Shown here one piece after another: positions 48,673-64,000 of a stretch of DNA of 64,000 nucleotides; positions within the stretch are counted from its first letter, which is position 1; each line of letters opens with the position of its first letter. The position numbers and the translations under genes are program-made. Under the pieces are notes generated by a model that was given only the letters and a program-made list of their open reading frames with translations, was not told the DNA's origin and made no database searches. The DNA lies in the NCBI GenBank assembly GCA_964019335.1, contig OZ025670.1:634221-698220 (forward strand). The letters are read 5' to 3'. The DNA is from Diplonema japonicum (lineage: Eukaryota; Protista; Euglenozoa: Diplonemea).

Positions 48673-48734
48673 GCCATTTTCATGGTAAAGGTTAACTTCT
48701 ATTCATGTGCAGATTTTTTTTGTCGGGTTTGCAA

Positions 48735-49296
48735 AAAATAGCTATTTATTGCCAACAAATGTCATTATTTTACTCGAGTTCCCGAATTTTTTGCACGAGG
48801 GCCCTGCAATTTTTCAAGGGGTTGGGTGCATCTTTTCCGCGGTGAGACCCATTTTTTCACTCTGAAGGGCCATTATTTAACTGCAAAATCTCATTACTGT
48901 AAAACAAAAATCCACCGGAAGATAAAATATCCGGACCGCCGAAACATCCGGTGATTTTTTCTTCCGGACATTTTTTGGGGCACTTTTCAAGGGGGTACCA
49001 AGCCTGTCCACGCTAGTAGTCCTACGCACTATCCCCTCCCCCTGTCTACTGCATGTTTCCCTGGAAAAACTTATGTTTCTGTTGCAGGAGTCTTAAAATT
49101 GGCAAAAATATGACTAAAAAAAAAAAGGGGTGAAGAACGTCCTACCTGTCCGTCTTGTTTGCTGCCTTCGCAGCCTTGGCAGTGTGCCTGGCCTCGGCCT
49201 CATAATGGCGATTTCGCGTTAAATAATGGTCATTTCACGTTAAATGATGAGGCCCCTAGTGAGTGAAGAAAATGACGAAGAGTGAAATTAAAAAAA
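48735..49296 (-). mobile_element. Rearranged inverted copy of the HINE/Helentron-like element at 51189-51757
   Basis: 48735-48895 and 49201-49296 are reverse complements of parts of 51185-51760. The middle is deleted and about 300 bp of unrelated sequence is inserted. Confidence 0.7.
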
Positions 49297-49309
49297 GGCG
49301 GAAAAAAAT

Positions 49310-49391
49310 CGCAGTCGGCAGGACTTGAACCTGCGCGGGCAGAGCCCAATGGATTTCTAGTCCACCTCCTTAACCGCTTGGATACGACTGC
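49310..49391 (-). tRNA. tRNA-Ser (anticodon AGA)
   Basis: 82 nt. Acceptor stem GCAGTCG/CGACTGC plus G, anticodon loop CT-AGA-AA, long variable arm, GGTTCAAGTCC, downstream T7 terminator. Confidence 0.95.
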
Positions 49392-49402
49392 TACGCGGAT
49401 AT

Positions 49403-50612
49403 ATTTTTTTTTCAAAATACCAATAGGTGCCACCATGGGGGAGCAACACCTGGGAAGGGGAAAGGTGAAGGGAAGCATGGAAATATTACAGGGAGGGCGA
49501 AGACCAGTTCTTCTGCAATCAGATGGAGCTGTGGACTCCGCCAACCCGTGCACCTGTTTGGAACAGCCGAAGAGGGCTGAATTACTTTAATTCCAAGCCG
49601 CGTAGACCTACGTGACTCGGACGGGGACCTTGACCCCAGTTCGTAGTTTTTCTCAACTGGGACCTCTGGTGACCGGAACTGGCCCCGGTCGCCCCCTCGA
49701 GAGGGATTTGCTCCATTGAGCGAAACATGAAAGGGTGAGAGTAAAATCTCTCAAAATCAAAAGGGGAAGCGAGCGTGCGTGTGCGCATGGGGATGATAGG
49801 GGAAGTATTTGCTCTCCCCGCTGCACTCCGGCAGGCGGGGGGAGGGGATGGCCGTACCACACTCGTTCGTGCGAAGATGAGAGGACTCATCAGGGCAACT
49901 TCAGAGTAGATCGGGCCATCCGTTTTGACTACAATGTCAGGGCACACGGCAACAAGAGGATGTTAATTTTAAAAATTTAAAAATTTAAAAGTGGGGACGG
50001 GCATACTGGTAAGAGAAAGGCCAGACGCCGGATGATGATGATAACATAAGAAAAGAGAAGGGAAGGGAACGTAAGCACTAAAAGAATTGAAAAGTTGATC
50101 TCACCATACTCACTTCAGCGCAACACGGGGGCCGCAGGGCCGGCGTCAAGGGAGACAGCCGGCGGGGGCGGGATGAACGAAGGGGCAGCGGTACCTGCTG
50201 TTGCCGCAGACGGCGACGTGAAGACCCCGGATCTGGCCCAGTCAAGCAAGCCAGAGTCGGCGATAAGGGTGAATACCTGCGTCACGCGTTTTGACAAGCA
50301 CTCCACCAGCGAGGGGCGTCCATTGGGAGCGTCGAGCGAACCCCGTCCAACCACAGCGCACCCCCCAACAACGTGCTCCCTGGACATCTGTGCTCCACAC
50401 GCTGGACAGCTGAGCTCAGCCTTCTTCCTGTTCGGTCCAGCCGCCTGCAGGAAGCCGAAGAAGAGAGCGGAGTGCCCTACCCTCAGCCGCGAGATGACCG
50501 TCTCCGCTAGCCTGGGGAGGGACTGGGGGAAGCACGCCGCTCGGAGCCCCGTGGCCCTCGCGTACCTCGGGGCCACCTCCCCGACAATGACCGCAGACCT
50601 CTGCTGAATCTG
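49403..50612 (-). mobile_element. Element A: 5'-truncated Ingi/I-group-like non-LTR 3' end (ORF remnant 50115-50612, ~700-bp 3' UTR, A tail)
   Basis: ISRLRVGH..CPAC..EH...C knuckle. TSD gcggatat at 49395-49402 and 50613-50620. Confidence 0.8.
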
Positions 50613-50624
50613 GCGGATATTTTT

Positions 50625-52295
50625 AATAATAATAATAATAATAATAAATGAACCACTGACGTGCGAAGCAAAGGCTGGGGGGGGGGGGGGGGGGACAGAA
50701 CAGGTGGACCAAGGGTCTCCCTGTATCTAACGAAAGGGGGAAAGGAATGAGATAACCTTGAAACTTTCGCTAAACTATCCATACGTACCGAGGACGGAGG
50801 TGGGGCCGGTTCGTGGGCTCCAGTGTTCGCGACTTCGCCCACCTCCGTGACCCCGGCAGCTCTCCAGCCCGCTTCCCTTGCCAGCACCCTTCGGGCGAAC
50901 CTCCGGGTTTTTGAGGAGTGGGGTACCTCGTCCGTGCTCGCCCTCACGAGCGGCACACTGGCACGGAGGCATCCCCTTCAGCCAGCTTTGTTGGGCGGCG
51001 GAGCCTTAGAAAATTCAAAACAATGGAAAATGATACGGGGGGATGTGTGAAGGGGCGGGGAAAGGTGAAGACAGAAGTTGGGGTGCACGACAGGGTAATA
51101 ATGGGAAACACAGGGGGAGGGGGAGAGGGTTCACTAGTACTTTTTGGTTCACTTTTTTCTGTTCCTTTTTTTTTTTTTTTTTTTTTTTATTTCACTCTTC
51201 GTCATTTTCTTCACTCACTAGGGGCCTCATTATTTAACGCGAAATGGCCATTATTTAACGCGAAACGGCCATTATTTAACGCGAAATCGCCATTATTTAA
51301 CTAGTTAAATAATGAGATTTTGCAGTTAAATAATGGCCCTTCAGAGTGAAAAAATGGGTCTTGTCGTGGAAAAAAATGCACCCAACCCCTTGAAAAATTT
51401 TTTTGGGGTGGGGGTATTTTGACTATTTTTGGCCATCTGAGGCCATTCCAGCCCTTAAAAGTGGGAATAAGTGCCTTACTTCCCCTTTAAATGCCACGGC
51501 GAAATAGCTACCCTGTATTACCTTAGGAAAATCCCCAAAAAGCTGACCTGCGTGAAAAAAAACAGCAGTGAAAGCAGTGAAGAGTGAGTGACTCAAATGA
51601 CGAAGAGTGAAATAAAACGACTTACTTGCCGCCAAATGAGCCATTATTTAACACTCGTTACCCGTTTTTTTGCACTCGGGCCCTGCGGGCCCTCGTGCAA
51701 AAAATTCGGGAACTCGAGTTAAATAATGACTCATTATTTGTTGGCAATAAATAGTTATTTTTTTTTTTTTTTTTTTTTTCTACGTCCTGCGATTGCGGTC
51801 AGCGGCTCGGCGGTCGTGAGAGTCTCAGATGAGGTCCATCCTCTTCAGGTAGGAGGCGGTTTCACTCACCCTCATTGTGAGCATCTCCTTCGTGGTCGTG
51901 GGGATGTCATCCCCGAAGATCTCTTCGCGGACCTTGTCTCCAGCTGGGCACCCGATCAGCAGATGGTGTCTGTCCTGGATCGAATGGCACGAGAGGCAAC
52001 GTATGTCACTCTGGACGGGTTTCGACAGGAAGCCGCAAGTCAGGTGGCTCCTGCCCGTTCGCAGTCTCGTTATCTGTACCTCATCGTGTCTGCAGGACAG
52101 CTCCTTCAAAGGGAGGTACCTCGCGCCGATCTCCTCTCGGTACTTCTTATCCCGACCAGTCTTCTCCCACGAGGCTGCCCAGTCGCGGTTCACCGACCTC
52201 TTGATGAGGCTCTTTGTGGTCATCAGGTCCGTCGGGCCGTCCGGTGTCGACTCCTTTGCGGCGCGTTTGGCGTGTCGGTCGGCTTGCTCGTTACC
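50625..52295 (-). mobile_element. Element D': truncated, near-identical copy of the element D 3' end with a (TTA)n tail, interrupted by the HINE-like insertion
   Basis: 51780-52295 is the reverse complement of 54742-55257, and 50625-51165 is the reverse complement of 55289-55820, with few substitutions. Confidence 0.9.
51189..51757 (+). mobile_element. Non-autonomous Helentron/HINE-like rolling-circle element inserted in a T tract
   Basis: 23-bp asymmetric subterminal inverted repeats (51185-51207 and 51595-51617), about four 21-bp tandem repeats, a ~100-bp 3' stem-loop (51636-51734), T runs on both sides and no coding capacity. Confidence 0.6.
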
Positions 52296-52755
52296 AGGTC
52301 AGCCTTCGACGGATGATGGACCACATCGGTTGGAAGCCGTCGTCTATCATCCGACGCTCTGACACGGCGTTCCAGGGCACGAGGCAGCTCGTGTTCTTCA
52401 TCGTCGCCGACGCCCCGCCCCCCAAGGCCAGGACATGGCTCTTCGGCTCTCTCCTCGTTCGACTGCACGACGCGGAAGCCACCCGAGCGTCACACTCCCG
52501 CCCCGCACCAAGAAGGCTCCACCCGCGGCTCAAACGCCGGTTGCGGCAACCACAGCCCAGACGCCGGCCCCTGACCCCACGGCGCAGTCCACAGGGCTGC
52601 CGAGCACCAATCCGTGGTCATCACCACCGAGCTCGGTAGCCCCTCCGCCACTTGGCACTGTGACTCCGGTCCCCTCCGCGGCTTCCCTGGCCACCACACC
52701 TCCCCATGACCGGAACCTGAGGCTCCTCACGCTGATCCAGTCGCATCACTTGGCC
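52290..52755 (+). pseudogene. Degenerate fragment of the element F ORF1
   Basis: Aligns to about 61890-62455 with frameshifts and deletions. Confidence 0.85.
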
Positions 52756-52801
52756 CTATCCCTCTCCCAACCCCTTCCTTCCTCTCACGAGTTGGCCCAA
52801 A

Positions 52802-55257
52802 CAGACGGCATCTACAACGAAATGCTGAAGTACCTGGGACCGGTGGCCAGGGAAGTTCAACTCCTCCTCTACAACTCATCCCTCCAGACCGGTGTCGTCC
52901 CTGCCGAATGGAGGCGGTCTTCCATCATCCCCCTCATGAAAAAGGGCAAAGACCAATCCGAACCCGCCTCGTACAGGCCGATCGCGCTGACGTCAAACAT
53001 CGTGAAGACGTTGGAGCGAATAGTCAAGGACAGGATGTGCTTCCTGCAGGACACAGGACGGGTAAGGCAATTGCACACATCGCAGGCGGGTTTCCGGAAA
53101 GGGAGGTCCACGGAGGAAAACGTGCTGTACGCCGCCTCAAAGCTCAAAAGTGTCAGACTGAGCCAAGGTCTGGGGGGTCTCCTGCTGTTCGACTTCAAAG
53201 GAGCCTTCGACACAGTCTGGCACAAGGGAGTGATCGCAAAGCTGATAGGCGACGGATACCCTCCCAAGCTCGTGAAATGGATCACCTCTTTCCTCGACCA
53301 ACGTAAAGCCTCCGTCTGTGTGAACGGGGAACACGGCTGCGTGAAGACAATGACAGGGGGCGTACCCCAAGGCACCATCCTGGCCCCGCAGCTCTTTTCC
53401 ATCTACGTCAACGACCTGGCCAGGTTGTACAGGAAGGCTGGAATCGACGCGGTAGTGTACGCAGACGACATAGCGATAGTGCTGGAGGCGGGGAGTCCTG
53501 CCGAGCTGAACAAGAAGGTGCAACGCGCGGTGAGCCTCACGGAGCGATGGTGCGAGACGTTCTCGATGAAACTGTCCCAGGAAAAGACAGAGTTCATGCC
53601 GGTAGAGGGACAGTTCTGGAACTCGCACGACAGTCTCGCAAACCTCATCAACGCCCGCTTCCCCTCGAGTGGGGCGAAAGTCAAGGTGGTACGCGAGGCT
53701 AAATATCTTGGCGTCACCTTCGACGAAAGCATGAACTTCCACGAGCATGTGCAGAAGGTGAAGGGAAAGATCAACAGCCGTCTTCGCCTGCTGCGCAAAC
53801 TCGCCGGAACAAGGTGGGGCTGCCGCAAGCACACCCTAAGGACGCTGTACCTGACGTACGTCCAACCGGTTCTGCGCTACTGTCTCGGTGCTTACGGCAA
53901 CTTCGTGGGACATGCTGCTCTGGCCGAGTTCGACTCGCTACAATACACAGCAGCGAGGTTGATAACGGGATGCTTCGACAAGACTTCCGCGACGGTGACC
54001 AGGTCAGAGGCGGGCATCTGGGAGATTGAATCCTTGCTGGAACACGACACCCTGGTGCTCTACGAGAAGGCACAGCGTCAACCGGGGACAACAGCGGAGA
54101 AGGCAACAAAGATATCCGGGGGTCAGATGTGGTACGGGAAAAGCTGGCGAAACACCGCGCTCGACTTGGCGAAGAGTCACGGGATGCCGGAACGCGAAGA
54201 CCTACCACACCACTCAGTCACTCAGAGCGCAGACCTGCAGCTCCCTCCATGGGTCCAACCCAAAGTCCTGTTCCACCCCGACCTAGTCCGCAAGGTACAC
54301 AAGAAGGACGAAAAAAGTCTCAAACTCCGAGCGGCCTTCGAATCGATCAGGAGGCACGGCATCCCAGATGTGATCGTCTACACCGACGGGTCAGTCACCG
54401 GACACAGGAACGGCGGTTCGGCAGCTGTGATAAGGATCGGGTCTGACACACCGAAGCAGGCACGCAAGAGCGGAGGAGCAGTGACTTCGGCCTACCGATG
54501 CGAACTGAAAGCGCTGAACCTGGGGCTGCAATTGACACTGTACCATACCCGGAGACAAGGTGTGACGACCGGAGTAGTGCTGCTGTGCTCGGACTCCCAG
54601 TCGGTGATCAGAAGACTGATGCAGGGCCACAGAGAGATGAGGCAGAAGGAGGAACTGCTGGCTTGGAAATGGCTGGACGCGCTTGACCGCCAAGGCCTCT
54701 CCACCATCATCCAGTACGTTCCCGGACACTGCGGCCTACCAGGTAACGAGCAAGCCGACCGACACGCCAAACGCGCCGCAAAGGAGTCGACACCGGACGG
54801 ACCGACGGACCTGATGACCACAAAGAGCCTCATCAAGAGGTCGGTGAACCGCGACTGGGCAGCCTCGTGGGAGAAGACGGGTCGGGACAAGAAGTACCGA
54901 GAGGAGATCGGCGCGAGGTACCTCCCCTTGAAGGAACTGTCCTGCAGACACGATGAGGTACAGATAACGAGACTGCGAACGGGCAGGAGCCACCTGACTT
55001 GCGGTTTCCTGTCGAAACCCGTCCAGAATGACATACGTTGCCTCTCGTGCCATTCGATCCAGGACAGACACCATGTGCTGATCGGGTGCCCAGCTGGAGA
55101 CAAGGTCCGCGAAGAGATCTTCGGGGATGACATCCCCACGACCACGAAGGAGATGCTCACAATGAGGGTGAGTGAAACCGCCTCCTACCTGAAGAGGATG
55201 GACCTCATCTGAGACTCTCACGACCGCCGAGCCGCTGACCGCAATCGCAGGACGTAG

Positions 55258-55292
<35 letters not shown>

Positions 55293-55820
55293 CAGAAAAA
55301 AGTGAACCAAAAAGTACTAGTGAACCCTCTCCCCCTCCCCCTGTGTTTCCCATTATTACCCTGTCGTGCACCCCAACTTCTGTCTTCACCTTTCCCCGCC
55401 CCTTCACACATCCCCCCGTATCATTTCCCTTTGTTTTGAATTTTCTAAGGCTCCGCCGCCCAACAAAGCTGGCTGAAGGGGATGCCTCCGTGCCAGTGTG
55501 CCGCTCGTGAGGGCGAGCACGGACGAGGTACCCCACTCCTCAAAAACCCGGAGGTTCGCCCGAAGGGTGCTGGCTTGGGAAGCGGGCTGGAGAGCTGCCG
55601 GGGTCACGGAGGTGGGCGAAGTCGCGAACACTGGAGCCCACGAACCGGCCCCACCTCCGTCCTCGGTACGTATGGATAGTTTAGCGGAAGTTTCAAGGTT
55701 ATCACATTCCTTTCCCCCTTTCGTTAGATACAGGGAGACCCTTGGTCCACCTGTTCTGTCCCCCCCCCCCCCCCAGCCTTTGCTTCGCACGTCAGTGGTT
55801 CATTTATTATTATTATTATT
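52802..55820 (+). mobile_element. Element D: 5'-truncated Ingi/I-group-like non-LTR retrotransposon (RT, RNase H, zinc knuckle; stop at 55212; 3' UTR with internal A tract; (TTA)n tail)
   Basis: DGIYNEML, YRPIALTS, QAGFRKGRST, GVPQG, YADD, KYLGV, VYTDGS, GHCGLPGNEQAD, RLRTG. TSD (tt)ggcccaaa at 52792-52801 and 55819-55828. Confidence 0.93.
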
Positions 55821-55842
55821 GGCCCAAAATCGAATGCGAACC

Positions 55843-55915
55843 GGCGAGTTCGCACTAGCGGTTAGGACCTCCACTAACCGTTAGTTAGGTTCCTGGTTCG
55901 ATTCCGCGTCAGCGC
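55843..55915 (+). promoter_or_regulatory. tRNA-derived internal Pol III promoter (A/B box) at the head of element E
   Basis: D-loop-like CTAGCGGTTAGGA (55855-55867) and B box GGTTCGATTCC (55895-55905) at tRNA spacing. The cloverleaf stems are degenerate. Confidence 0.65.
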
Positions 55916-56213
55916 TAGTATTAGTATATCATCCTCTACCTGTCGGGTTGGCTGACCGGACGAAAAGTTCCACCATCTGGAACTTGAACCTGGACCGCCG
56001 GTGGAGGGATCCCCAAACCCAACAACTCCACCAAGTTGGAAAGTGGTGGCCACTTGCATAAAACCAACAAACTAACCTGTAGTTCCTGATACTCACTGGC
56101 GAACAGCACCAAAGGGCGGGGATGTCAAGAGACCAGTGCCAGTACCAGTGAGTCGTAATGTAAAGGTAAAGGGACAAACGGGGGAGGCCTCCGGGCCTCT
56201 TTTAAAAAAAAAA

Positions 56214-56338
56214 GGGGTCCGATTACACACACACATGAACATGTAGACGAACGCGGTGTGTGTGGTGGCTGCCCACCTCCACGGTGGTGGTCCCTGGGCA
56301 ACGCGCAGGTGGTGAAGGTTGCGCGGCTGAGAGGCAGC
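56214..56338 (+). ncRNA. HDV-like self-cleaving ribozyme
   Basis: P1 GGGGUCC/GGUCCCU, P2 GCUGCCC/G(A)GGCAGC, P3 ACC/GGU, L3 UCCACGGU, GG-GCAA, P4 CGCGCA/UGCGCG, J4/2 GCUGA. Confidence 0.8.
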
Positions 56339-57554
56339 TCGAGAGGAGGAGCAGGGGAACGGTGTTGCGTTGGGCGGCCGAGGGCCGGAGCCGGAGCGCC
56401 GTGTTGGATGGCATCCCCTGGGGAAGCCTCCTGCACGCCAGAACGAGGACCGGATCCGGAGACGCCGTTTGATGGTTTTCCTGGGGAAGCTGACCTGAAC
56501 GCCCGAGCGAAGTGGCCTGAGCGTGGGGAGCACTGTTTGCCGACAGAAAACAAGATTAATGCAAAATGTCCAGAGTGCGCAACAGTGTTTTCCACGTGAG
56601 GGGTTCGATTTCAAAGTGGGTCCTCCAGCCACCAGAGTTGTAGGCTGGGTTCCCGCGGAGAGAGAATCGGAGCGGAGGCGTCAAGTACGGTGGACCACCT
56701 CAAGGGATGTAAGTCCATTGTGTGACACAGTCTCTCGGTGAAGGTCCGACTTCTGGTGGGTAGGCAGGCAGAACCGCATAGGGGTGTAAGGAACACCATT
56801 GTGTGACCTGTCGCACACGGGGAAAGCCCAAGGCCGGTGGGTTATCTGCCAACGTGTCCCCCTCCTCTACTTCGCCTCTCACAACCTCTTCCTCCCCGCT
56901 GACGATTGACTCCACAGCACTCGCCGGCCTACCTGGTGCGCCCGCGTCATTACGCGATAGGGAGTCTCGTTGGAAAAACATCTTTCGCAGCTGAGAAGGG
57001 GGGTTTTTTTTTTTTTTAGAAATAGTAACCAGTAATTCTTTTTTCCCCCTCCCCCATTGGTTTCCCTTTCTTTTTATTTTCCCTACCAGGCTCCTTTTCT
57101 AGTTATGCATTCCTCCCTTCTTTGTGGAAGTTGAGTTCTGAACTTGACTTTTCCTTTTACATTTCCTTTTCAAATTTATATTTTAGGCTCCCACAGCCCA
57201 ACAAAACCAGCAGATGGTGGGGTCCCTGTGGCTGGATAAATCAAAATTAGGGATCTCATCGCCGTCCTTTAATATTTGGGGTTGTCTTTATTTGGTGACA
57301 GCCGAAGCCTTCGAGGCCCAAGAGCTGCGTGGCGGGGGAATGGGGAAAAAATAAGAAAGGTGGATGTCGGGGGCCCAGGAAAATATACAAGAGGTCGAGC
57401 AAACGAGCAAGAGGTCCCCCCCGATATGGCTCAGTAAGAGAGACTGTTTTAACCTTCCCTTCCCAATTTTTATGGTTTCAACTTTCTCCGCCCCCCATCC
57501 CCCCCCGCCTGGTAGTGGAATAATTATTATTATTATTATTGGCCCAAAATCGTC

Positions 57555-57626
57555 GGCTCGGTGGTCTAGTGGCATGATTCTCGCTTAGGGTGCGAGAGGT
57601 CCCGGGTTCAATTCCCGGCCGAGCCC
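57555..57626 (+). tRNA. tRNA-Pro (anticodon AGG)
   Basis: 72 nt. Acceptor stem GGCTCGG/CCGAGCC, anticodon arm CTCGC-TTAGGGT-GCGAG, GGTTCAATTCC, T6 terminator. Confidence 0.97.
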
Positions 57627-57705
57627 TTTTTTGTGCTCAAATCTGAAGTCTAGTCCTTACCCCCCCCCCGTTCCTCCCCGTGGCTATCACCACAGCTTAA
57701 AGTGT

Positions 57706-60420
57706 GTGGCTACTTGACTCCCCGACAACGATGGTAGAGGGACTTCACCCCGCCCAGGCTGGCTTCAGGAAAGGGAGGTCCACCGAGGAGCAGGTTGCCG
57801 CCATCGTGCAGCATGTGACGATAAAAAGGAACGCCGAAGTTAAGGAGGCATGCCTCACCATACTCTTTGACTTCTCAAAGGCGTTCGACAGGGTCAACCA
57901 CGAGGCACTCATTCAGAAGATGTCTCAGAAGCGCTTCCCTACGGCCTACACCAGGTGGGTTTCCTCCTTCCTAACGTCCAGAACAGCGAGGATAGTCGTG
58001 GAGGGTGTCAAGGGGACCCCTTACAAAATCAAGAGTGGCGTGCCTCAAGGTTCTGTACTCGGTCCAGTGCTGTTCACCATCTTCGTGGACGACCTAGCGA
58101 GGGAACTTGAGGGTCTGGCTGGGCTCTCCACGATCTACGCGGACGACGTCGCGGTAGTAGTCTCTGCCACAACAAGGACTGAGCTCGAGGCCAGGGCCAC
58201 GGCGGTAGTGGGTGCAGTCGAAGACTGGTGTACACGATGGGGGATGCAGTTGAGCAGGGAGAAGACGCTGTACGTCCCCACCCCCAAATGCGAACCGTAC
58301 GACTTCCACGTCTACTACCCCTCGACCGGGGCGACGCATCCGGGCTTCGAATTCCAGCCGCTGGAGCTCAAGGGCCGACTCATCGCCGGGGGACCTACTC
58401 ACCTGATCGGGAGGAGGCTCCTGTCCGTTAACCGCACGGCCACGACACGACGCGACGTCTCTGCACTCGTCTCCAAAGGGCTGGTGTATGAATTCTCCAC
58501 GGCCGTCCCCGTTGCGAGGCGTGATAGGGCCAAGTATCTAGGGGTCATCCTTGACGCTGGCTTGTCTTTCGGTGCCCATGCCCGCGACATCATCGAGAGA
58601 TACGACAAACGAATTCGCATACTGCGGCTCCTCTCCGGCTCGTCCTGGGGCAGTTCAGCAGCATCACTCAGGTCCTTGTACCTGGCCTACGTCCTACCGG
58701 TGTTCACCTACTCGATTGGCATCTTCTTCGCACTGATGTCTGCTCAAGACAGGAAGGCACTGTGCATGAGGCACGATGAGGCAGCCCGACGAATCACGGG
58801 GTGCGTCAAGAACACCTCCACCTCGGCTGTACTGTGTGAGGCCCGCTTGCGCCCGCTCGACCTGATGGCCGACGCTGCTTCTGCCATTCTACTGCAGAGG
58901 GCACTGAGGTGGGTGGGAACCCCGGTGAACAGGGTGGTCAGGGGTGCAGCTACCGCAGGATGGGCCTTGGGAGCGCTGAAGGCGACGAGGAGTTCTGGGC
59001 TGAGTGCGGTTGCTTCCCTACCGCTAGGGCCTGATACGAGAGCCCCCCCCTGGGCGGAAGGCATCCACGTCGATCCCTACGCCACCGACACCAGGAGGAC
59101 ACTCCCCGACGATGTGAGGGCGGCAGCGGCTGCGGAAAAGCTGGACGAGATCCCAAGCGGCGCTCTGGTAGTGTACACGGACGGCTCGGTGATAAGGGGG
59201 AGAGGGGGAGCTGGGGTTGCCCTCAGAGTCCCCGACATGGACCTCACCCTTACCACCTCTCACGGGGCCGGCATGGTCTCCACACCCATGTGCGCCGAGG
59301 GCACCGCTATCCTGATGGGGTTGAAGGAGGCTGCGGAGGTGTACAAAACGGTCGTGAACCTGAGGGGCCGCCCTCTCTACCTGCTGACCGACTCACAGAC
59401 GATGCTGCGGAGGCTCGCTGGAGGCCCCGGACAGCAGAGGGAGTCCACGGACAGACGGATCTGGGATGCCGCTTCCTGGCTCAGGGCCAAACGCTCTGGT
59501 GATGTGCACTTCTGGTACATCCCCTCCCACTGCGGTGTGACGGGGAACGAGCTCGCCGACGGAGCGGCCAGGGACGGGCTGTCGAAGTCGCCTTGCGGGG
59601 TTAGCTACCGCTCCAGCAAGGCGGCCATAAAAGCGTGGCTGAGAGGAAGGTCGCGTGCGAGATACAACAGCGACTCCCCCGGCCACCACCGCCTCGTCAC
59701 CGGTGGCGAATGTCTCTCTCTCCCACCACTCAGTAGGAGGGATGAGGTCCTGATCATTCGGCTCCGGACCGGACACACGCCTTTGAATAGGGGGTACCTC
59801 CAGCTCAAGGGACCCCTGAGGGCTGAGGGGAGTCATCACCTCACCTGCCCCGCCTGCAACGTTCAATCACCGCTCGACGCTGATCACCTGCTGAGGGGCT
59901 GTCATTCTCTGGCTCCCACAGCTAAGTCCTTCTACGACACTGGGCTGCCGCTCCGCGCGCTGCTTTCCAAGCACTCCGCCGAGGTCTGCGCCTTCATCGA
60001 GGCCTCCGGGCTCTTATCATGGTCTGAGTGTGGGATCTTCCCCCCGGCCGACGCAGCACAAGGGTGATCGTGAGCCCATTATAGACCCCCCCCCTACCCC
60101 TTTGTCCCCCCCCCCCCCCCCCCCCCACACACACACACTCACACGCAAATGGGCCAAGAAACAACCTCCCGGGAGGCAGCCACAGGGAAGGCCGGGAGGG
60201 CGCAGGGCGCAGCAAGAGAACGCCCCTGCGTTCAGCCTCGAGGGGACCGCCCCGAATGTAATCAGCCAGGTCGGCTGTCCCAGGAAGGGGGAACGGAGCA
60301 CCGAAGGGAAGGTTCAGCCCACGTGGTGGCCCTCTCGGTTACTCCAGACAAAAGACTGGACACACCCCACACCCCTCCCCCCACCCCCAGTTTCCCCCCA
60401 GTGGTTATTATTGCAAAAAA
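57706..60420 (+). mobile_element. Element G: 5'-truncated Ingi/I-group-like non-LTR retrotransposon (RT, RNase H, CCHC; stop at 60067)
   Basis: QAGFRKGRST, DFSKAFD, GVPQGSVLGP, YADD, VYTDGS, SHCGVTGNELAD, RLRTGH, CPAC..H...C. A tail. TSD aaagtgt at 57699-57705 and 60421-60427. Confidence 0.92.
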
Positions 60421-60444
60421 AAAGTGTATCCCCCGCCGCTGATT

Positions 60445-60480
<36 letters not shown>

Positions 60481-60488
60481 AAAGAATC

Positions 60489-62714
60489 ATGTCGACCTCC
60501 AACAAGAAGAAAAAGAGGCCCGCTCACCACAAGTCCAGGACGGAAGAAATCCTGGAGAAAGCCCGCGGTGAGCGGGTAAAGGACAACGCCGCCGCCAGGG
60601 CGAAGCGCACGCGCGAGGAGGTGGAGAGGAAGCGCGCAGAGGGGGTCACGCCGGTGGTGACACCCTCCCCCGGGCAAGGGAAGAAGGCGGCCAGAAGGGC
60701 CAGACAGAAGGCAGCAGCTGCTGACGCTGCCACCGCCGCCGCTTCGGGCTCCGACGACTCTGTCGTCTTAATTAGCGAGTCGCCGGGCGTTGTCACCTCG
60801 TTCACGGTCGACACGCCAGAGGTCAGGAGGGCGAGGATGAGGACTGCTGCCGCCGACACCACTGCCACTGCTCCTGCACCTGCTGCTGCCAACACCACTG
60901 CTCCTGCACCTGCTGCCGACTCCCCTGCTCCTGCACCTGCTGCTGCCGACACCACTGCTCCTGCGCCTGCTGCTGCCGACTCCCCTGCTCCTGCGCCTGC
61001 TCCAGCCTCTACTGCTGCCGTGTGGTCTGCTGCCGTCCTCACTGCCGCTGCCTGCGACACCGCCCTCCCCATGTCGGACTCTGACACCGACGAGAAGGAC
61101 ACGGCCCCCGCTCCCGCACCGGCCCCGGAGCCTCACTGGGATCTGGTCCCCGACACGTGGGACGCCCCCATCTACACCAACACTGCTCCCCCTGAGGAGG
61201 TGCCCCGCGCCGTCGTCGCTCTCGACGACCTCCAGCAGGTGGACGCGATTCGCACTGCGAGGCCCACGGCCTCCCTGACCTTCGTCCTCTTGACGGAGGT
61301 TGCCGGTTCGACCACCCCATGCACCGTCATCGTACTCGCCGGCCAGCGTGTCGTGCACAAGGCCGTGCACACCTTCTCGGTCGGGTCGAACCCCCCCTCC
61401 TACACCCCACTCGCTTCTTTTGATGGCGGCTCTGAGGTAGTGTACGTCAGCGTGAAAGCTGACAGCGTGAACGCGGCGAAGGCCAGGGTTCGGGACCTCG
61501 TCGCGACCCAGGGCGTGGCGGTGGAGGAGCAGGCGATCTTCCGCCCGAAGAAGATCGACGGGAACGAGCCGCGGGCGCGGCACTGGAGCCACGAGGTGGG
61601 CCTGCGGCTCCCGGCGGCATCCGTCCATGCGGTACTCCGGGCCTCGGGCGACGGCTGCATGGTCAGGACGACCGAGCGGCGCGGGGGGTACACCTACGTG
61701 CCCATCGTAGCGGAGGGGAGGGCGGAGGCCTTCCAGCTGGCGAAGGCACTGGGCGGGTTGTCCCTGGGGGTGGCCCATCGCAAGGGTTGGACCGTGAGGT
61801 GCCTGCCGGAGACGGAGCAGCGTCTGAGGGAGGCCCTCGCCAAGCAGAGGACAAAGCGTCGGTACCTGCTCACCGGAGCCCCGCTGTCTGTTACCAGGGC
61901 AGCCTTCGACGGGATGATGGACCACATCGGTTGGAAGCCGTCGTCCATCATCCGACGCTCTGACACGGCGTTCCAGGGCACGAGGCAACTCGTGTTCTTC
62001 ATCGTCGCCGACGCCCCGCCCCCCAAGGCCAGGACATGGCTCTTCGGCTCTCGTCTCGTTCGACTGCACGACGCGGAAGACCACCCGAGCGTCACGCTCC
62101 CGCCCCGCACCAACAAGAAGGCCCCACCCGCGGCTCGGACGCCGGTTGCGGCAACCACGGCCCAGACGCCGACGCCGGCCCCTGGCCCCACGGTGCAGTC
62201 CACAGGGCTGCCGAGCACCAATCCGTGGTCATCTCCACCGAGCTCGGTTGCCCCTCCGCCACTTGGCACTGTGACTCCGGTCTCCTCTGCGGCTTCCCCG
62301 ACCACGACACCTCCCCGTGACTCCCAGAAGAAGAATCCCGCACCGGAACCAGAGGTCCCGGCGCTCCTCGCGCTGATCCAGTCGATGCAGGCGACCATCG
62401 ACGGTCTGCAGGCGACGGTCCGCGACCTCCAGGAGAGGATGGCAGCGTCACTTGGCGCGCCGGCGTCATCTGCAGACGGAGCTGGGCGGACGGCAGTGGC
62501 TGGGAAGGGCAAGGGCGGCAAGGCTGGGTCCAAGGCAGGGACGAAGGGGCACCAGGCGCAGGGCGTAAGCACGCCAGGCCCCTACCCGACATCGACGGAG
62601 CAAGGGGGCGGAAGGGGACGCGCCCAGTCGCTGGCTGGCGACTCTGCTTCCCCCAACGGGGCCGGCCGTGGACGGGCAGCCTCTGTGGGCCCGGCCCCCG
62701 CCCCTGCCAATTGA
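60489..62714 (+). CDS. Element F ORF1 (741 aa; basic N-terminus, Ala/Pro/Thr repeats, coiled coil)
   Basis: ATG follows a (GA)n tract. The ORF directly precedes the APE ORF, and a second decayed copy lies at 52290. Confidence 0.75.
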   Translation: MSTSNKKKKRPAHHKSRTEEILEKARGERVKDNAAARAKRTREEVERKRAEGVTPVVTPSPGQGKKAARRARQKAAAADAATAAASGSDDSVVLISESPGVVTSFTVDTPEVRRARMRTAAADTTATAPAPAAANTTAPAPAADSPAPAPAAADTTAPAPAAADSPAPAPAPASTAAVWSAAVLTAAACDTALPMSDSDTDEKDTAPAPAPAPEPHWDLVPDTWDAPIYTNTAPPEEVPRAVVALDDLQQVDAIRTARPTASLTFVLLTEVAGSTTPCTVIVLAGQRVVHKAVHTFSVGSNPPSYTPLASFDGGSEVVYVSVKADSVNAAKARVRDLVATQGVAVEEQAIFRPKKIDGNEPRARHWSHEVGLRLPAASVHAVLRASGDGCMVRTTERRGGYTYVPIVAEGRAEAFQLAKALGGLSLGVAHRKGWTVRCLPETEQRLREALAKQRTKRRYLLTGAPLSVTRAAFDGMMDHIGWKPSSIIRRSDTAFQGTRQLVFFIVADAPPPKARTWLFGSRLVRLHDAEDHPSVTLPPRTNKKAPPAARTPVAATTAQTPTPAPGPTVQSTGLPSTNPWSSPPSSVAPPPLGTVTPVSSAASPTTTPPRDSQKKNPAPEPEVPALLALIQSMQATIDGLQATVRDLQERMAASLGAPASSADGAGRTAVAGKGKGGKAGSKAGTKGHQAQGVSTPGPYPTSTEQGGGRGRAQSLAGDSASPNGAGRGRAASVGPAPAPAN
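60845..61010 (+). repeat. Imperfect 27-36-bp coding tandem repeat ((A)ADT/SPAPAPA)
   Basis: gccgac(accact/tcccct)gctcctgc(a/g)cctgct is repeated about five times. Confidence 0.8.
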
Positions 62715-62855
62715 AGGGGTCCCGCTGAGCAGGGGGGGCGTCAGATCGACGACCACGCCCCCTCTCCTGGTCTCCCGCGCATACAGCCGAGGAGACACCT
62801 TCCACATCACTTGTACGACGTCCTCCCTTCCTTGATCCCTTCCTTACTTGAACGG

Positions 62856-64000
62856 ATGTCGGCCAGGGACCTGCTGGGGCTGCTTGGGCTGGTTGAGACG
62901 AACCCCGGTCCACCTAAGAAGCTCCCACCCCCGAAGCCGAAGGGACTCAGGGTCCTGTCCTGGAACTGCAACGGTCTTGCCGCCAAGTGGTCAACCGTGT
63001 CCTACCACGCTGTCCTACTGACGCTGGATATCATTATGATCCAGGAGACACACCTTAGGGAGGGGCATGAGACACCATACCTGCCTGGATACACGTCCTA
63101 CAGGAGGGACCGCACAACACCGGTGACGGACGGCTCTGCGACGAGAGGCGGTGGTGTCATCACGTATGTCCGTGACTGCCTTGCCTCGGAGGAAGCTCCT
63201 TTCGTACTCCCTGAAGGTGACAGTGTCACTGAGCGATTAGACGTGAGGATCTCCTGTGTGAAGCGCGTCCCGGTCACCCTCTCCAACGTGTACCTCACGC
63301 CTGTGAGTATAAGCAGAGGAACAAGGGACCCCGAGTACCTACGGCCGGGCAGCCTACCTGTGGGGAAGAACACGATCGTTGCTGGCGACTTCAACGCACA
63401 CCACAGCTCTTGGGATGCCAAGGTGACAACGCCCAACGAAAGGGGGAACGTGGTCAGGGACTGGCTTGACACCCACGGCTACACCGTCTACAACAACCGA
63501 GACGAGCCGACGCGGGACTCACCGCCACGCGTTCTGGACCTGGTGGTGGGACGTTGTGCGGAACTGGAGCCGAGGACGTTGGGGACGTGGGGCTCTGATC
63601 ACAGCCCGGTTTCCTTCCGCCTGCCGCTTGAGGACGCCTACTGCTCGGAGCGACCCTGCCCTACCTGGAACTTCAAAAAGGCCAGGTGGGACGACTTCAC
63701 CGCGGCCGCCGCTGCCCTTCTGACCAAGATCGACACGAAGGCCCACATTGACTCCTTCACGAAGGAGGTTACAGAGGCTCTTCTGCATGCAGCTGACGAC
63801 CACATTCCGCTTTGCGGAGTGCGACGAGGCCCGACCCCCTGGTGGACGGCCGAACTCGAAGACGCCTTCGAAGAACGGAACGCCCTGCGGGATCGCTTCC
63901 TCAAGTCGGCTGAGACTGAGGACGACAGCGTGGCGGCGGTCTACAAGGCGAAGGTCAAGGAGGTAAACCAACTCATGACCGAGTCGAAGCGCGCGGCCTG
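62856..64000 (+). CDS. Element F ORF2 N-terminus: 2A-like motif and AP endonuclease; continues past the window end
   Basis: Absent from the ORF track because it has no stop in the window. Translates to LVETNPGP, SWNCNG, IQETH, GGGV, GDFNAHH, GSDH and WNFKKARWDDF. Confidence 0.92.
   Translation, partial: MSARDLLGLLGLVETNPGPPKKLPPPKPKGLRVLSWNCNGLAAKWSTVSYHAVLLTLDIIMIQETHLREGHETPYLPGYTSYRRDRTTPVTDGSATRGGGVITYVRDCLASEEAPFVLPEGDSVTERLDVRISCVKRVPVTLSNVYLTPVSISRGTRDPEYLRPGSLPVGKNTIVAGDFNAHHSSWDAKVTTPNERGNVVRDWLDTHGYTVYNNRDEPTRDSPPRVLDLVVGRCAELEPRTLGTWGSDHSPVSFRLPLEDAYCSERPCPTWNFKKARWDDFTAAAAALLTKIDTKAHIDSFTKEVTEALLHAADDHIPLCGVRRGPTPWWTAELEDAFEERNALRDRFLKSAETEDDSVAAVYKAKVKEVNQLMTESKRAA

What the first reader, a model, noticed from the sequence alone, without database searches (positions are those of the whole stretch)
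49310..57626. Position-specific targeting of non-LTR retroelements immediately upstream of tRNA genes
Seen in the sequence: four separate insertions have 3' tails at nearly the same offset before a tRNA +1, all co-oriented with the tRNA. At tRNA-Pro, element E ends 14 nt upstream (TSD ggcccaaaatcg). Element D shares the same 3' junction (TSD ggcccaaa at 52794 and 55821), which is also 14 nt upstream once E is removed. At tRNA-Ser, element A ends about 12 nt upstream (TSD gcggatat) and D' ends about 15 nt upstream once A is removed. The same family (D/D') hit two different tRNA genes whose upstream sequences differ (ggcccaaaatcgtc versus aaaaatatccgcgta). At least three distinct families (A, D, E) behave this way. 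Established knowledge: yeast Ty3 and Dictyostelium TRE5 are tethered near Pol III genes through TFIIIB, while trypanosome ingi/L1Tc are not known to me as tRNA-targeted. Inference: this is an independently evolved, Pol III-complex-guided safe-haven system in RNase H-bearing Ingi-like elements, where new insertions stack between the older tail and an intact tRNA.
Basis: partly seen in the sequence, partly recalled or inferred. Interest (0 to 1): 0.93.

Follow-up and report, generated by a model that had tools for sequence, protein, structure and literature searches.

The report
LINEs that insert just upstream of tRNA genes
In this diplonemid-like protist genome, several families of non-LTR retrotransposons insert about 10-16 bases upstream of tRNA genes, always in the tRNA's direction, and pile up there; this habit was previously known for non-LTR elements only in social amoebae.

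Summary

**In the window**

**Genome-wide**
- Of 30 copies of D's 3' module, 12 end 10-23 nt upstream of a co-oriented tRNA gene, covering 9 anticodons.
- Eight more sit in stacks whose TSDs place them at the same spot.
- In a sample of 60 tRNA genes chosen without regard to repeats, 23 carry a LINE tail within 25 nt upstream. All 23 are co-oriented (chance about 4e-32).
- At least six diverged LINE lineages, plus non-coding partners, do this.
- D has at least 11 intact copies and a 100% identical transcript.

**Host**
- The host is a euglenozoan. It has a spliced leader, and its closest named relatives are diplonemids.

**What is not shown**
- Guidance by the Pol III complex is plausible but untested.
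- "Ingi-like" is not established.

**Novelty**
- This is a new variant of a known kind. The nearest analogue is Dictyostelium purpureum NLTR-A.
- I found no paper reporting it for Euglenozoa.
- Other first-stage notes of this scan describe the same phenomenon elsewhere in this genome.

The parts
49310..49391 (-). tRNA-Ser(AGA) gene, the target of the left-hand stack
   Evidence: ARAGORN. Rfam tRNA 57.9 bits.
49392..49403 (-). 12-nt spacer between A's poly(A) and tRNA-Ser +1. It contains the 3' TSD copy ATATCCGC (49395-49402).
   Evidence: Sequence; script.
49404..50612 (-). Element A: a 5'-truncated 3' part (1.2 kb) of the poly(A)-tailed LINE family A1. The 5' TSD copy is at 50613-50620.
   Evidence: the same family extends further 5' in L070, L071 and L086, each abutting a tRNA. 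A1 loci encode an RT/RNase H C-terminus, about 29-33% identical to P0003 and P0004.
50626..52304 (-). Element D': a 5'-truncated D copy. Parts: S' module with (TTA)n tail 50626-51165; A tract 51166-51188; nested repeat X2 51189-51757; A tract 51758-51779; R' (end of ORF2) 51780-52304.
   Evidence: Inverted repeats I1, I2 and I5, 98-100% complementary to D. L014. X copies.
52299..52793 (+). Fragment of ORF1 plus inter-ORF region of a G-like LINE (93-98% to 61906-62390). It is joined to R' through a 6-nt GTTACC overlap, has no LINE tail, and its origin is unexplained.
   Evidence: Direct repeats D2, D3, D7 and D10. At least 16 genomic ORF1 matches.
52794..52801 (+). 5' TSD copy of D (ggcccaaa)
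   Evidence: It abuts the first base of D homology at 52802 (matches from query base 498, P0001 aa 315 at 52804). The 3' copy is at 55821-55828.
52802..55820 (+). Element D, 5'-truncated within ORF2. Parts: RT-RNase H-CCHC coding part to the stop at 55212; short UTR; internal poly(A) 55259-55289; 3' module S 55290-55820 ending in (TTA)n.
   Evidence: Pfam RVT_1 and RNase_H. Full-length copies have a 1444-1445 aa ORF2. About 30 copies of S at 97-99% identity.
55821..55832 (+). 5' TSD copy of E (ggcccaaaatcg)
   Evidence: Identical 12-mer at 57541-57552.
55833..57540 (+). Element E, non-coding and composite: E_a 55833-56212 (ends in A10) followed by GGGG and E_b 56213-57540 ending in (ATT)n.
   Evidence: E_b alone sits in L019 with TSD AAAAAGAATT next to tRNA-Lys. 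The composite is also upstream of a tRNA-Thr gene in L037. E shares only its last ~40 nt with the tail of the P0002 LINE family.
57541..57554 (+). 14-nt spacer (3' TSD copy plus tc) before tRNA-Pro +1
57555..57626 (+). tRNA-Pro(AGG) gene, the target of the right-hand stack
   Evidence: ARAGORN.
57690..60423 (+). Element F: a 5'-truncated RT-RNase H LINE whose tail ends ..cagtggttattattgc plus A9. It belongs to a further stack that runs off the contig end. The 5' boundary is approximate.
   Evidence: Pfam. The same tail abuts 4 of the 60 sampled tRNA genes.
60448..64000 (+). Element G: the 5' part of a full-length LINE. Parts: (GA)n/(GAAAA)n leader; ORF1 60490-62714; ORF2 from 62856 with a 2A-like LVETNPGP motif and the endonuclease domain. 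It is cut by the contig end.
   Evidence: G 5' ends follow older LINE tails in L092, L096 and L097; one copy (L093) starts with a spliced leader.

Best explanation
The region between the divergent tRNA-Ser and tRNA-Pro genes is filled by two stacks of non-LTR retrotransposons. These belong to a group of LINE lineages that integrate specifically just upstream of tRNA genes.

**Shown**
- Each insertion is co-oriented with the tRNA gene.
- Its 3' tail, poly(A) or (TTA)n, ends about 10-19 nt before tRNA +1.
- It is flanked by an 8-13 nt target-site duplication. The left edge of that duplication lies about 10-16 nt upstream of tRNA +1 and the right edge between -6 and +2.
- The next insertion uses the same window, so it lands between the older tail and the tRNA gene and pushes the older element outwards.
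- The tRNA species and the local sequence differ from site to site.
- At least six lineages that are only 27-47% identical in ORF2 do this, as do non-coding partners that share only a 3' end with a LINE.

**Inferred**
- Integration is by target-primed reverse transcription. The first nick is on the bottom strand at about -10 to -16, and the second is on the top strand next to tRNA +1.
- The position is measured from something common to all tRNA genes. The most likely candidate is the bound Pol III initiation machinery (TFIIIB/TFIIIC), as for Ty3 and TRE5-A.
- The endonuclease's liking for short A/T runs probably sets the exact base.
- The A/T-rich tail ends up where unoccupied tRNA genes have an A/T-rich block (-30 to -21). 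This may be why occupied genes stay usable.
For: **Window junctions and TSDs:**

**D/S family:**
- About 30 copies at 97-99% identity.
- 12 are directly adjacent to co-oriented tRNA genes: Pro, Leu, Thr, Met, Gly, Tyr, Ser (two anticodons) and Phe.
- 8 more have a co-oriented tRNA 212-1372 nt downstream.
- All 8 of those stacks have TSDs that restore a 12-18 nt spacer.

**Unbiased sample of 60 tRNA genes**:
- 23 are occupied: A2 8, A1 3, F 4, E/P0002-type 3, D/S 2, and one each of three further (TTA)n-tailed types (L051, L058, L089).
- 0 have an antisense tail.
- P is about 4e-32.
- None of the 37 unoccupied genes has a dispersed repeat closer than 73 nt. The one exception, L035/L036, is a duplicated pair.

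**Recent activity:**
- At least 11 D copies have an open 1444-1445 aa ORF2 at 99-100% identity.
- EukProt transcripts are 100% (P0001) and 99% (P0002) identical to genomic copies.
- A2 tails are about 100% identical, with 175 candidates.

**Control:** 0 of 80 environmental LINE relatives have a tRNA on their contig.

**Upstream architecture of unoccupied genes:**
Against: - Nothing here shows what the elements recognise. No protein contact was tested, and no expression or occupancy data were available.
None of the listed S or A2 copies lies next to the 22 5S or 6 U6 genes found, but with these numbers that is not informative.
- For poly(A)-tailed families the nick position is blurred, because the tail merges with A runs in the target. 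Apparent spacers there range from 1 to 13 nt.
- 10 of the 30 S loci show no co-oriented tRNA within the 1.5-kb flank held. One is the window's own D, whose tRNA-Pro lies beyond the flank. Five of the others (L011, L013, L018, L023, L024) are followed by other LINE sequence.
- The G-like fragment at 52299-52793, just upstream of D's TSD, has no LINE tail and does not fit simple stacking.
- The local assembly was not checked with reads.
Confidence: 0.82

Rival explanations
1. The targeting is real, but the elements read DNA directly rather than being tethered to Pol III factors. An element protein would recognise a feature common to tRNA genes and nick at a fixed distance. Candidate features are the A box at +8 to +19 or the upstream layout (A/T block, GC block at -18 to -15, short A run).
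For: - Unoccupied tRNA genes share a marked upstream composition profile, and 14 of 37 have an A run of 3 or more starting between -18 and -5.
- Junctions very often lie at the start of an A run.
- No adjacency to 5S or U6 genes was seen among the listed copies.
Against: - After one insertion the upstream layout is replaced by a LINE tail, yet further insertions hit the same spot. Stacks reach at least three elements deep in the window (D', A on the tRNA-Ser side; D, E on the tRNA-Pro side), so the native upstream sequence cannot be what is read.
- No extra DNA-binding domain was found in ORF1 or ORF2 by Pfam.
- Recognition of the A box is not excluded.
Confidence: 0.3
2. Integration is near-random, and only copies that landed in harmless places next to tRNA genes have survived selection.
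For: - The genome is gene-dense in this window, with long same-strand ORFs.
- Elements cluster in certain contigs.
Against: - Selection cannot produce a spacing of about 10-19 nt, 100% co-orientation (23 of 23 and 20 of 20), or TSDs that always end at tRNA +1 within a few bases.
- The copies are 97-100% identical and therefore very young.
Confidence: 0.03
3. The association comes from duplication of tRNA genes together with their flanks, or from elements carrying tRNA genes along (3' transduction), not from targeting.
For: Some sampled tRNA loci are duplicates with shared flanks: L035/L036 and probably L068/L075.
Against: - The same element family abuts many different tRNA species, with different spacers.
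- The TSDs flank the element alone and exclude the tRNA gene.
Confidence: 0.02
4. The nest in this window is an assembly artefact made of collapsed or chimeric repeats.
For: - The region is made of young repeats and lies 6 kb from a contig end.
- No reads could be laid.
Against: - Every junction has a matching TSD.
- The same architecture recurs at dozens of other loci on other contigs.
- Contigs from three separate studies of the same organism hold about 70% of the sampled words of 49200-57700, although that does not prove their order.
Confidence: 0.02

Closest known systems
Dp_NLTR-A of Dictyostelium purpureum (and Pp_NLTR-B of Polysphondylium pallidum)
   Same: - An APE-type non-LTR retrotransposon with an RNase H domain after the RT.
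- It integrates within a few bases upstream of the mature tRNA coding sequence (2-6 bp for NLTR-A), whatever the tRNA identity (PMC5006619, PMC5911963).
   Different: - The host supergroup differs: Amoebozoa there, Euglenozoa here.
- There it is a single family with 28 copies. Here at least six diverged lineages plus non-coding partners occupy about 38% of sampled tRNA genes.
- The offset here is about 10-16 nt for the first nick.
- Here some tails are (TTA)n and there are 3' modules.
- Sequence relatedness was not tested.
TRE5-A / TRE3-A of Dictyostelium discoideum
   Same: - Non-LTR elements that target tRNA genes at a set distance and form nested clusters.
- TRE5-A ORF1 binds TFIIIB subunits, which is the model for the mechanism proposed here (PMC5911963, PMC3159450).
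   Different: - TRE5 inserts about 44-54 bp upstream in the opposite orientation, and TRE3 inserts 40-150 bp downstream.
- They have a zinc-finger domain and no RNase H, and they are placed with the L1 group.
- Here the offset is about 12 nt, the orientation is the same as the tRNA, and RNase H is present.
Ty3 of Saccharomyces cerevisiae (and Tj1, Tyl elements)
   Same: - Integration at or within a few bases of the Pol III transcription start, which leaves the tRNA gene intact.
- A TFIIIB-guided safe haven (PMC5911963, PMC6673722).
   Different: Ty3 is an LTR element that uses an integrase, makes a 5-bp TSD and shows no strict co-orientation. Here integration is by target-primed reverse transcription with 8-13 nt TSDs.
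ingi / L1Tc of trypanosomatids
   Same: - The host phylum is Euglenozoa.
- The domain order is APE-RT-RNase H with a C-terminal zinc motif.
- One family in the window (G) and transcript P0002 carry a 2A-like NPGP motif. That L1Tc has a 2A-like peptide is from my own knowledge, not checked here.
   Different: - To my knowledge ingi and L1Tc are not tRNA-targeted.
- No trypanosomatid protein was among the 120 best homologues.
- No HDV-like ribozyme was found at any 5' end; the only hit is a weak internal one in E.

Membership tests
tRNA-gene-targeting non-LTR retrotransposons (functional class: TRE5, TRE3, NLTR-A/B) | Encodes an APE-type endonuclease and a reverse transcriptase, and has no LTRs | tested here: met
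   - RVT_1 and RNase_H in D and F.
- Exo_endo_phos in P0001 and P0002 and in full-length D copies.
- The endonuclease domain starts in G's ORF2.
- Tails are poly(A) or (TTA)n and there are no terminal repeats.
tRNA-gene-targeting non-LTR retrotransposons (functional class: TRE5, TRE3, NLTR-A/B) | Copies lie in a narrow distance window from tRNA genes of many different identities | tested here: met
   - 12 of 30 S copies lie at 10-23 nt, and 8 more do so after their stacks are resolved.
- 23 of 60 sampled tRNA genes are occupied within 25 nt.
tRNA-gene-targeting non-LTR retrotransposons (functional class: TRE5, TRE3, NLTR-A/B) | Fixed orientation relative to the tRNA gene | tested here: met
   All 23 sampled cases, all 20 S cases with a tRNA assigned (12 adjacent, 8 stacked) and all 4 window cases are co-oriented. 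No antisense tails were seen.
tRNA-gene-targeting non-LTR retrotransposons (functional class: TRE5, TRE3, NLTR-A/B) | New insertions target tRNA genes in living cells (shown for TRE5-A) | not testable with these tools
   There is only indirect support: near-identical copies, intact ORFs and identical transcripts.
TRE lineage (Dictyostelium TRE5/TRE3, L1 group) | ORF2 with APE-RT-zinc finger and no RNase H; about 50 bp upstream in opposite orientation, or downstream | tested here: not met
   RNase H is present, the offset is about 12 nt and the orientation is the same as the tRNA.
Ingi clade of non-LTR retrotransposons | RT phylogeny groups the element with T. brucei ingi and T. cruzi L1Tc | not tested
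   - No labelled reference sequences were available.
- The best named homologues are metazoan and Diplonema papillatum LINEs at 28-32% identity, with no trypanosomatid hit in the top 120.
- The ESM Atlas gives only generic RT+RNase H clusters.
Ingi clade of non-LTR retrotransposons | Domain order APE-RT-RNase H with a C-terminal zinc motif | tested here: met
   invariant C740, C743, H751 and C756 in alignment A1. This order is shared with the I, Nimb, Tad1 and Loa groups, so it does not discriminate.
Ty3-like (Metaviridae) Pol III start-site targeting | LTRs and an integrase | tested here: not met
   No LTRs or integrase domain. There are TPRT hallmarks instead: 3' tails, 5' truncation and variable TSDs.

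The most novel reading that the evidence does not exclude
The ability to integrate at about -12 of tRNA genes arose on its own within Euglenozoa, in a whole clade of RNase H-bearing LINEs. These elements persist because their A/T-rich tails stand in for the tRNA gene's own upstream A/T block, so that a large share of the cell's tRNA genes are now driven from retrotransposon-derived upstream sequence.

In addition, the templates are mature trans-spliced mRNAs. One copy carries the spliced leader in its DNA. 3' modules are swapped between RNAs by template switching, which would explain the internal poly(A)-GG joints.
Probability: 0.3. Interest if true: 0.8.

Novelty: new variant of a known kind. 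Interest (0 to 1): 0.68.

Why it matters
**A second case outside the social amoebae.** Targeting of tRNA genes is the textbook safe-haven strategy of retrotransposons in compact genomes. For non-LTR elements it was documented only in dictyostelid amoebae (PMC5911963, PMC5006619). This would be a second, distant case in a different eukaryotic supergroup. It has a different offset and orientation, many coexisting lineages and high occupancy.

**What it makes testable.**
- It gives a natural comparison for how an endonuclease/RT machine is positioned by, or next to, the Pol III apparatus.
- It allows a test of whether such insertions are neutral for tRNA expression.

**Practical value.**
- It helps annotate diplonemid-type genomes, where these stacks could be mistaken for genes. 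The 925-aa ORF here is a chimera.
- Precise, sequence-independent insertion sites are also of interest for targeted gene delivery.

Tried and rejected
- **Fixed 5' end of D.** I first read as showing that all D copies start at 52802. One search corrected this: full-length copies exist, and the window copy is simply truncated there.
- **S as a separate SINE.** I considered that S is a SINE joined afresh to poly(A) tails at each event.
  - 25 of 28 full-length S copies follow the same R-poly(A)-GG.
  - One exception is explained by a nested repeat in the A tract (window D').
  - The other exceptions (L006, L028) can be explained by 5' truncation inside the A tract.
  - A DNA-encoded composite is therefore simpler. 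Template switching at the origin of the composite remains possible.
- **More own-genome DNA.** D 5' junctions at other loci and the flanks of 5S and U6 genes could therefore not be read.
- **Rfam scan for 5' ribozymes.** It gave only one weak internal HDV-like hit.
- **The tRNA-like look of E's first 100 nt.** It has a GGTTCGATTCC-type box, but the tRNA model did not support it at E of 1 or less.
- **ESM Atlas.** It did not resolve the LINE clade.

Full report
**Setting**

- The window is the last 64 kb of a 698-kb contig in a 62.5-Mb, 132-contig assembly.
- Long ORFs all lie on one strand.
- A conserved SNF2 ATPase gene finds diplonemid proteins as its best named relatives: Diplonema papillatum 45% and Sulcionema 43%.
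- The host is therefore a euglenozoan, probably a diplonemid relative. Its name is coded in the run records.

**Checking the observation**

ARAGORN finds tRNA-Ser(AGA) at 49310-49391 (-) and tRNA-Pro(AGG) at 57555-57626 (+). They are divergent, so the 8.2 kb between them is upstream of both. Reading the sequence with the repeat finder confirms each junction:

- **E** ends at 57540, 14 nt before tRNA-Pro. It is flanked by ggcccaaaatcg at 55821-55832 and 57541-57552.
- **D** ends at 55820 on the same junction. ggcccaaa at 52794-52801 sits exactly where homology to other D copies and to transcript P0001 starts, at 52802.
- **A** (minus strand) has its poly(A) ending 12 nt before tRNA-Ser. Its TSD ATATCCGC is at 49395-49402 and 50613-50620.
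- **D'** ends in (TTA)n, 15 nt before tRNA-Ser once A is removed.

**Anatomy of the elements**

- **D** is a 5'-truncated copy of an autonomous LINE.
  - Full-length copies have an open ORF2 of 1444-1445 aa (endonuclease, RT, RNase H, CCHC). At least 11 such copies are 99-100% identical.
  - Other copies are truncated at various points (Pfam).
  - An EukProt transcript (P0001) is 100% identical.
  - The 925-aa ORF listed mechanically at 52435-55212 is a chance in-frame fusion with an ORF1 fragment of another family.
  - D's 3' end is unusual. After the stop codon and a short UTR come about 30 A, then GG, then a 530-nt module (S) ending in (TTA)n.
  - 25 of 28 full-length S copies have this same upstream part.
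- **D'** reaches from 50626 to 52304 on the minus strand and carries a 570-bp repeat (X2) nested in its internal A tract.
- **A** is the 3' 1.2 kb of a poly(A)-tailed LINE, family A1.
- **E** is non-coding and composite: E_a (380 nt, ending in A10), then GGGG, then E_b (1328 nt).
  - E_b occurs alone with its own TSD in L019. The composite also occurs upstream of a tRNA-Thr gene in L037.
  - E shares only its last ~40 nt with the tail of the LINE family represented by transcript P0002, which is 99% identical to copies in L064 and L082. This is the pattern of a LINE and its non-autonomous partner.
- **Downstream of tRNA-Pro** lie a further truncated LINE (F) and the 5' half of a full-length one (G: ORF1, then ORF2 with a 2A-like NPGP motif). 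They form another stack that runs off the contig.

**Genome-wide test from the element side**

- S has about 30 copies at 97-99% identity.
- With 1.5-kb flanks, 12 end 10-23 nt upstream of a co-oriented tRNA gene. The genes are Pro-TGG three times, Thr-AGT twice, Leu-CAG, Met, Gly-TCC, Tyr-GTA, Ser-AGA, Ser-CGA and Phe-GAA.
- Eight more have a co-oriented tRNA 212-1372 nt downstream.
- In all eight, the bases right after the S tail are repeated right before the tRNA gene. These TSDs are 8-13 nt long and reach -6 to +2. Removing the younger element restores a 12-18 nt spacer.
- Of the 10 remaining loci, one is the window's own D, whose tRNA-Pro lies beyond the flank held. At least five others (L011, L013, L018, L023, L024) are followed by other LINE sequence, so a tRNA gene would lie beyond the flank too.
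- One locus (L028) has only an opposite-strand tRNA downstream.

**Genome-wide test from the tRNA side**

I took the 60 best Rfam tRNA hits in the genome, chosen without reference to repeats, with 2 kb upstream.

- 23 have a LINE tail ending within 25 nt upstream:

| Family | Occupied tRNA genes |
|---|---|
| A2 | 8 |
| A1 | 3 |
| F | 4 |
| E/P0002 type | 3 |
| D/S | 2 |
| S2-like (L051) | 1 |
| Other (TTA)n types (L058, L089) | 2 |

- No tail lies in the opposite orientation.
- The density of such tail motifs in the window predicts 0.0085 per site, so the binomial P is about 4e-32.
- Of the 37 unoccupied genes, 27 have no dispersed repeat within 300 nt and 8 have one no closer than 73 nt. The remaining two (L035, L036) are a duplicated pair.
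- Further TSDs were found in this set, for example TACCTCAAACAT in L064 and AAATCCGTCA in L076, both reaching tRNA -1.
- In L095 the 5' flank of a G copy contains the first 16 nt of a tRNA-Lys gene. This suggests that the second nick can fall inside the gene, with the duplication restoring it; the 3' end of that copy was not seen.
- As an outside control, none of 80 environmental contigs encoding distant relatives of these LINEs (25-36% identity) carries any tRNA gene. Many of those contigs are short.

**How many lineages**

- tblastn with P0001 shows further families at 47, 45, 41, 38 and 35% identity, with open frames of about 1430-1480 aa.
- Local tblastn shows that A1, A2 and F encode RT/RNase H C-termini only 27-36% identical to the reference proteins.
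- At least six lineages therefore share the habit. Either it is old in this clade or it spreads easily.
- A2 tails are about 100% identical, with 175 candidates in the first look.

**How it most likely works**

- **Shown:** the geometry, namely tail position, TSD edges, orientation and stacking.
- **Inferred:**
  - Integration is by target-primed reverse transcription. The bottom-strand nick is at about -10 to -16, which is the left edge of the TSD. The top-strand nick is next to tRNA +1.
  - Stacks keep forming after the native upstream DNA has been replaced by a LINE tail. The positional cue must therefore come from the tRNA gene itself or from what is bound to it.
  - By analogy with Ty3 and TRE5-A (PMC5911963), the bound TFIIIB/TFIIIC complex is the best candidate. 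Direct reading of the A box is the main rival.
  - Junctions very often fall at the start of an A run, as expected for an APE-type endonuclease that frees a T-rich primer.
- **A further inference.** Unoccupied tRNA genes show an A/T-rich block at -30 to -21 (A+T up to 0.92), a GC block at -18 to -15 and A at -1. After insertion, the (TTA)n or poly(A) tail lies where the A/T block was. This may keep the gene functional, but it was not tested.

**Comparison with the literature**

- The 2018 review lists TRE5, TRE3, NLTR-A and NLTR-B, all dictyostelid, as the tRNA-targeting non-LTR elements (PMC5911963).
- NLTR-A has an RNase H domain and inserts 2-6 bp upstream (PMC5006619). It is the closest analogue.
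- Full-text searches found no report of tRNA targeting in diplonemids, kinetoplastids or euglenids.
- The Diplonema papillatum genome paper, a 2025 paper with draft diplonemid assemblies and a 2026 Discoba preprint do not mention it.
- Membership in the Ingi clade could not be tested. The domain order fits but is shared by several clades, and no trypanosomatid protein was among the 120 best homologues.

**Limits**

- The G-like fragment at 52299-52793 is joined to the inverted end of D' by a 6-nt overlap and has no tail. It is not explained by simple stacking.

**Relation to earlier notes**

Several first-stage notes on other windows of this genome describe the same phenomenon. They are unchecked notes, not independent support. 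The tests here were run on my own samples.

**Verdict**

The proposed mechanism is plausible but untested. It is a new variant of a known kind and of solid interest to transposon and Pol III biologists.

Noticed in passing
L093 minus strand, about positions 50-130; also G000 genome-wide: One G-family LINE copy begins with GG plus a complete spliced leader (..CTAAAGCTACAGTTTCTGTACTTTATTG) joined to the normal leader just before the ORF1 ATG. A trans-spliced mRNA was therefore reverse-transcribed into the genome. The spliced-leader 19-mer occurs 232 times, dispersed. Many copies lie near contig ends and point outwards. It also lies 2229-2257 nt upstream of the P0001 region in three full-length D copies.
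   Followed up: partly
window 55259-55291 and 56203-56216; L002-L027: There are internal poly(A) tracts followed by G residues inside active elements: D is R-poly(A)~30-GG-S, and E is E_a-A10-GGGG-E_b. No TSD lies between the modules. This looks like fossil template switching from a capped 5' end onto a poly(A) tail, with the chimera then spreading as a unit.
   Followed up: partly
window 56264-56339 (+): A weak HDV-like ribozyme match (22.5 bits, gathering score 44, E 0.2) lies 51 nt inside E_b. It is not at a 5' end and may well be chance.
   Followed up: no
window 48734-49297 (+) and 51189-51757 (-); L020, L065, L077: Repeat X is about 570 bp, contains 21-nt tandem units (ccattatttaacgcgaaatgg) and has an A-rich end. 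One copy faces the 3' end of tRNA-Ser 13 nt away, and one is nested in D' 's internal A tract. In L020 a copy also lies downstream of a tRNA-Ser(AGA) gene. Its nature is unclear.
   Followed up: partly
window 52299-52793: An ORF1/inter-ORF fragment of a G-like LINE has an internal deletion and no 3' tail. It is joined to the inverted end of D' by a GTTACC overlap and fused in frame to D's RT, which produces a spurious 925-aa ORF.
   Followed up: partly
L031-L090, 30 nt upstream of 37 unoccupied tRNA genes: The upstream layout is conserved: an A/T-rich block at -30 to -21, a GC block at -18 to -15 (A+T 0.11-0.27), and A at -1 in 21 of 37 genes.
   Followed up: yes
window 62856-62915; P0002 N-terminus: A 2A-like self-cleaving peptide motif (LVETNPGP in G; DVEQNPGP in P0002) lies at the start of ORF2.
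   Followed up: no
L095, first 80 nt (oriented): The 5' flank of a G copy contains the first 16 nt of a tRNA-Lys gene. This suggests a target-site duplication that reaches into the gene.
   Followed up: no
window 55833-55930: The first ~100 nt of E_a contain a B-box-like GGTTCGATTCC and look faintly tRNA-like, but the tRNA covariance model gives no hit at E of 1 or less.
   Followed up: yes
window 42230-46198 (+): A 1322-aa ORF combines an SRCR domain with a complete alpha-N-acetylglucosaminidase (NAGLU N, TIM-barrel and C domains).
   Followed up: no
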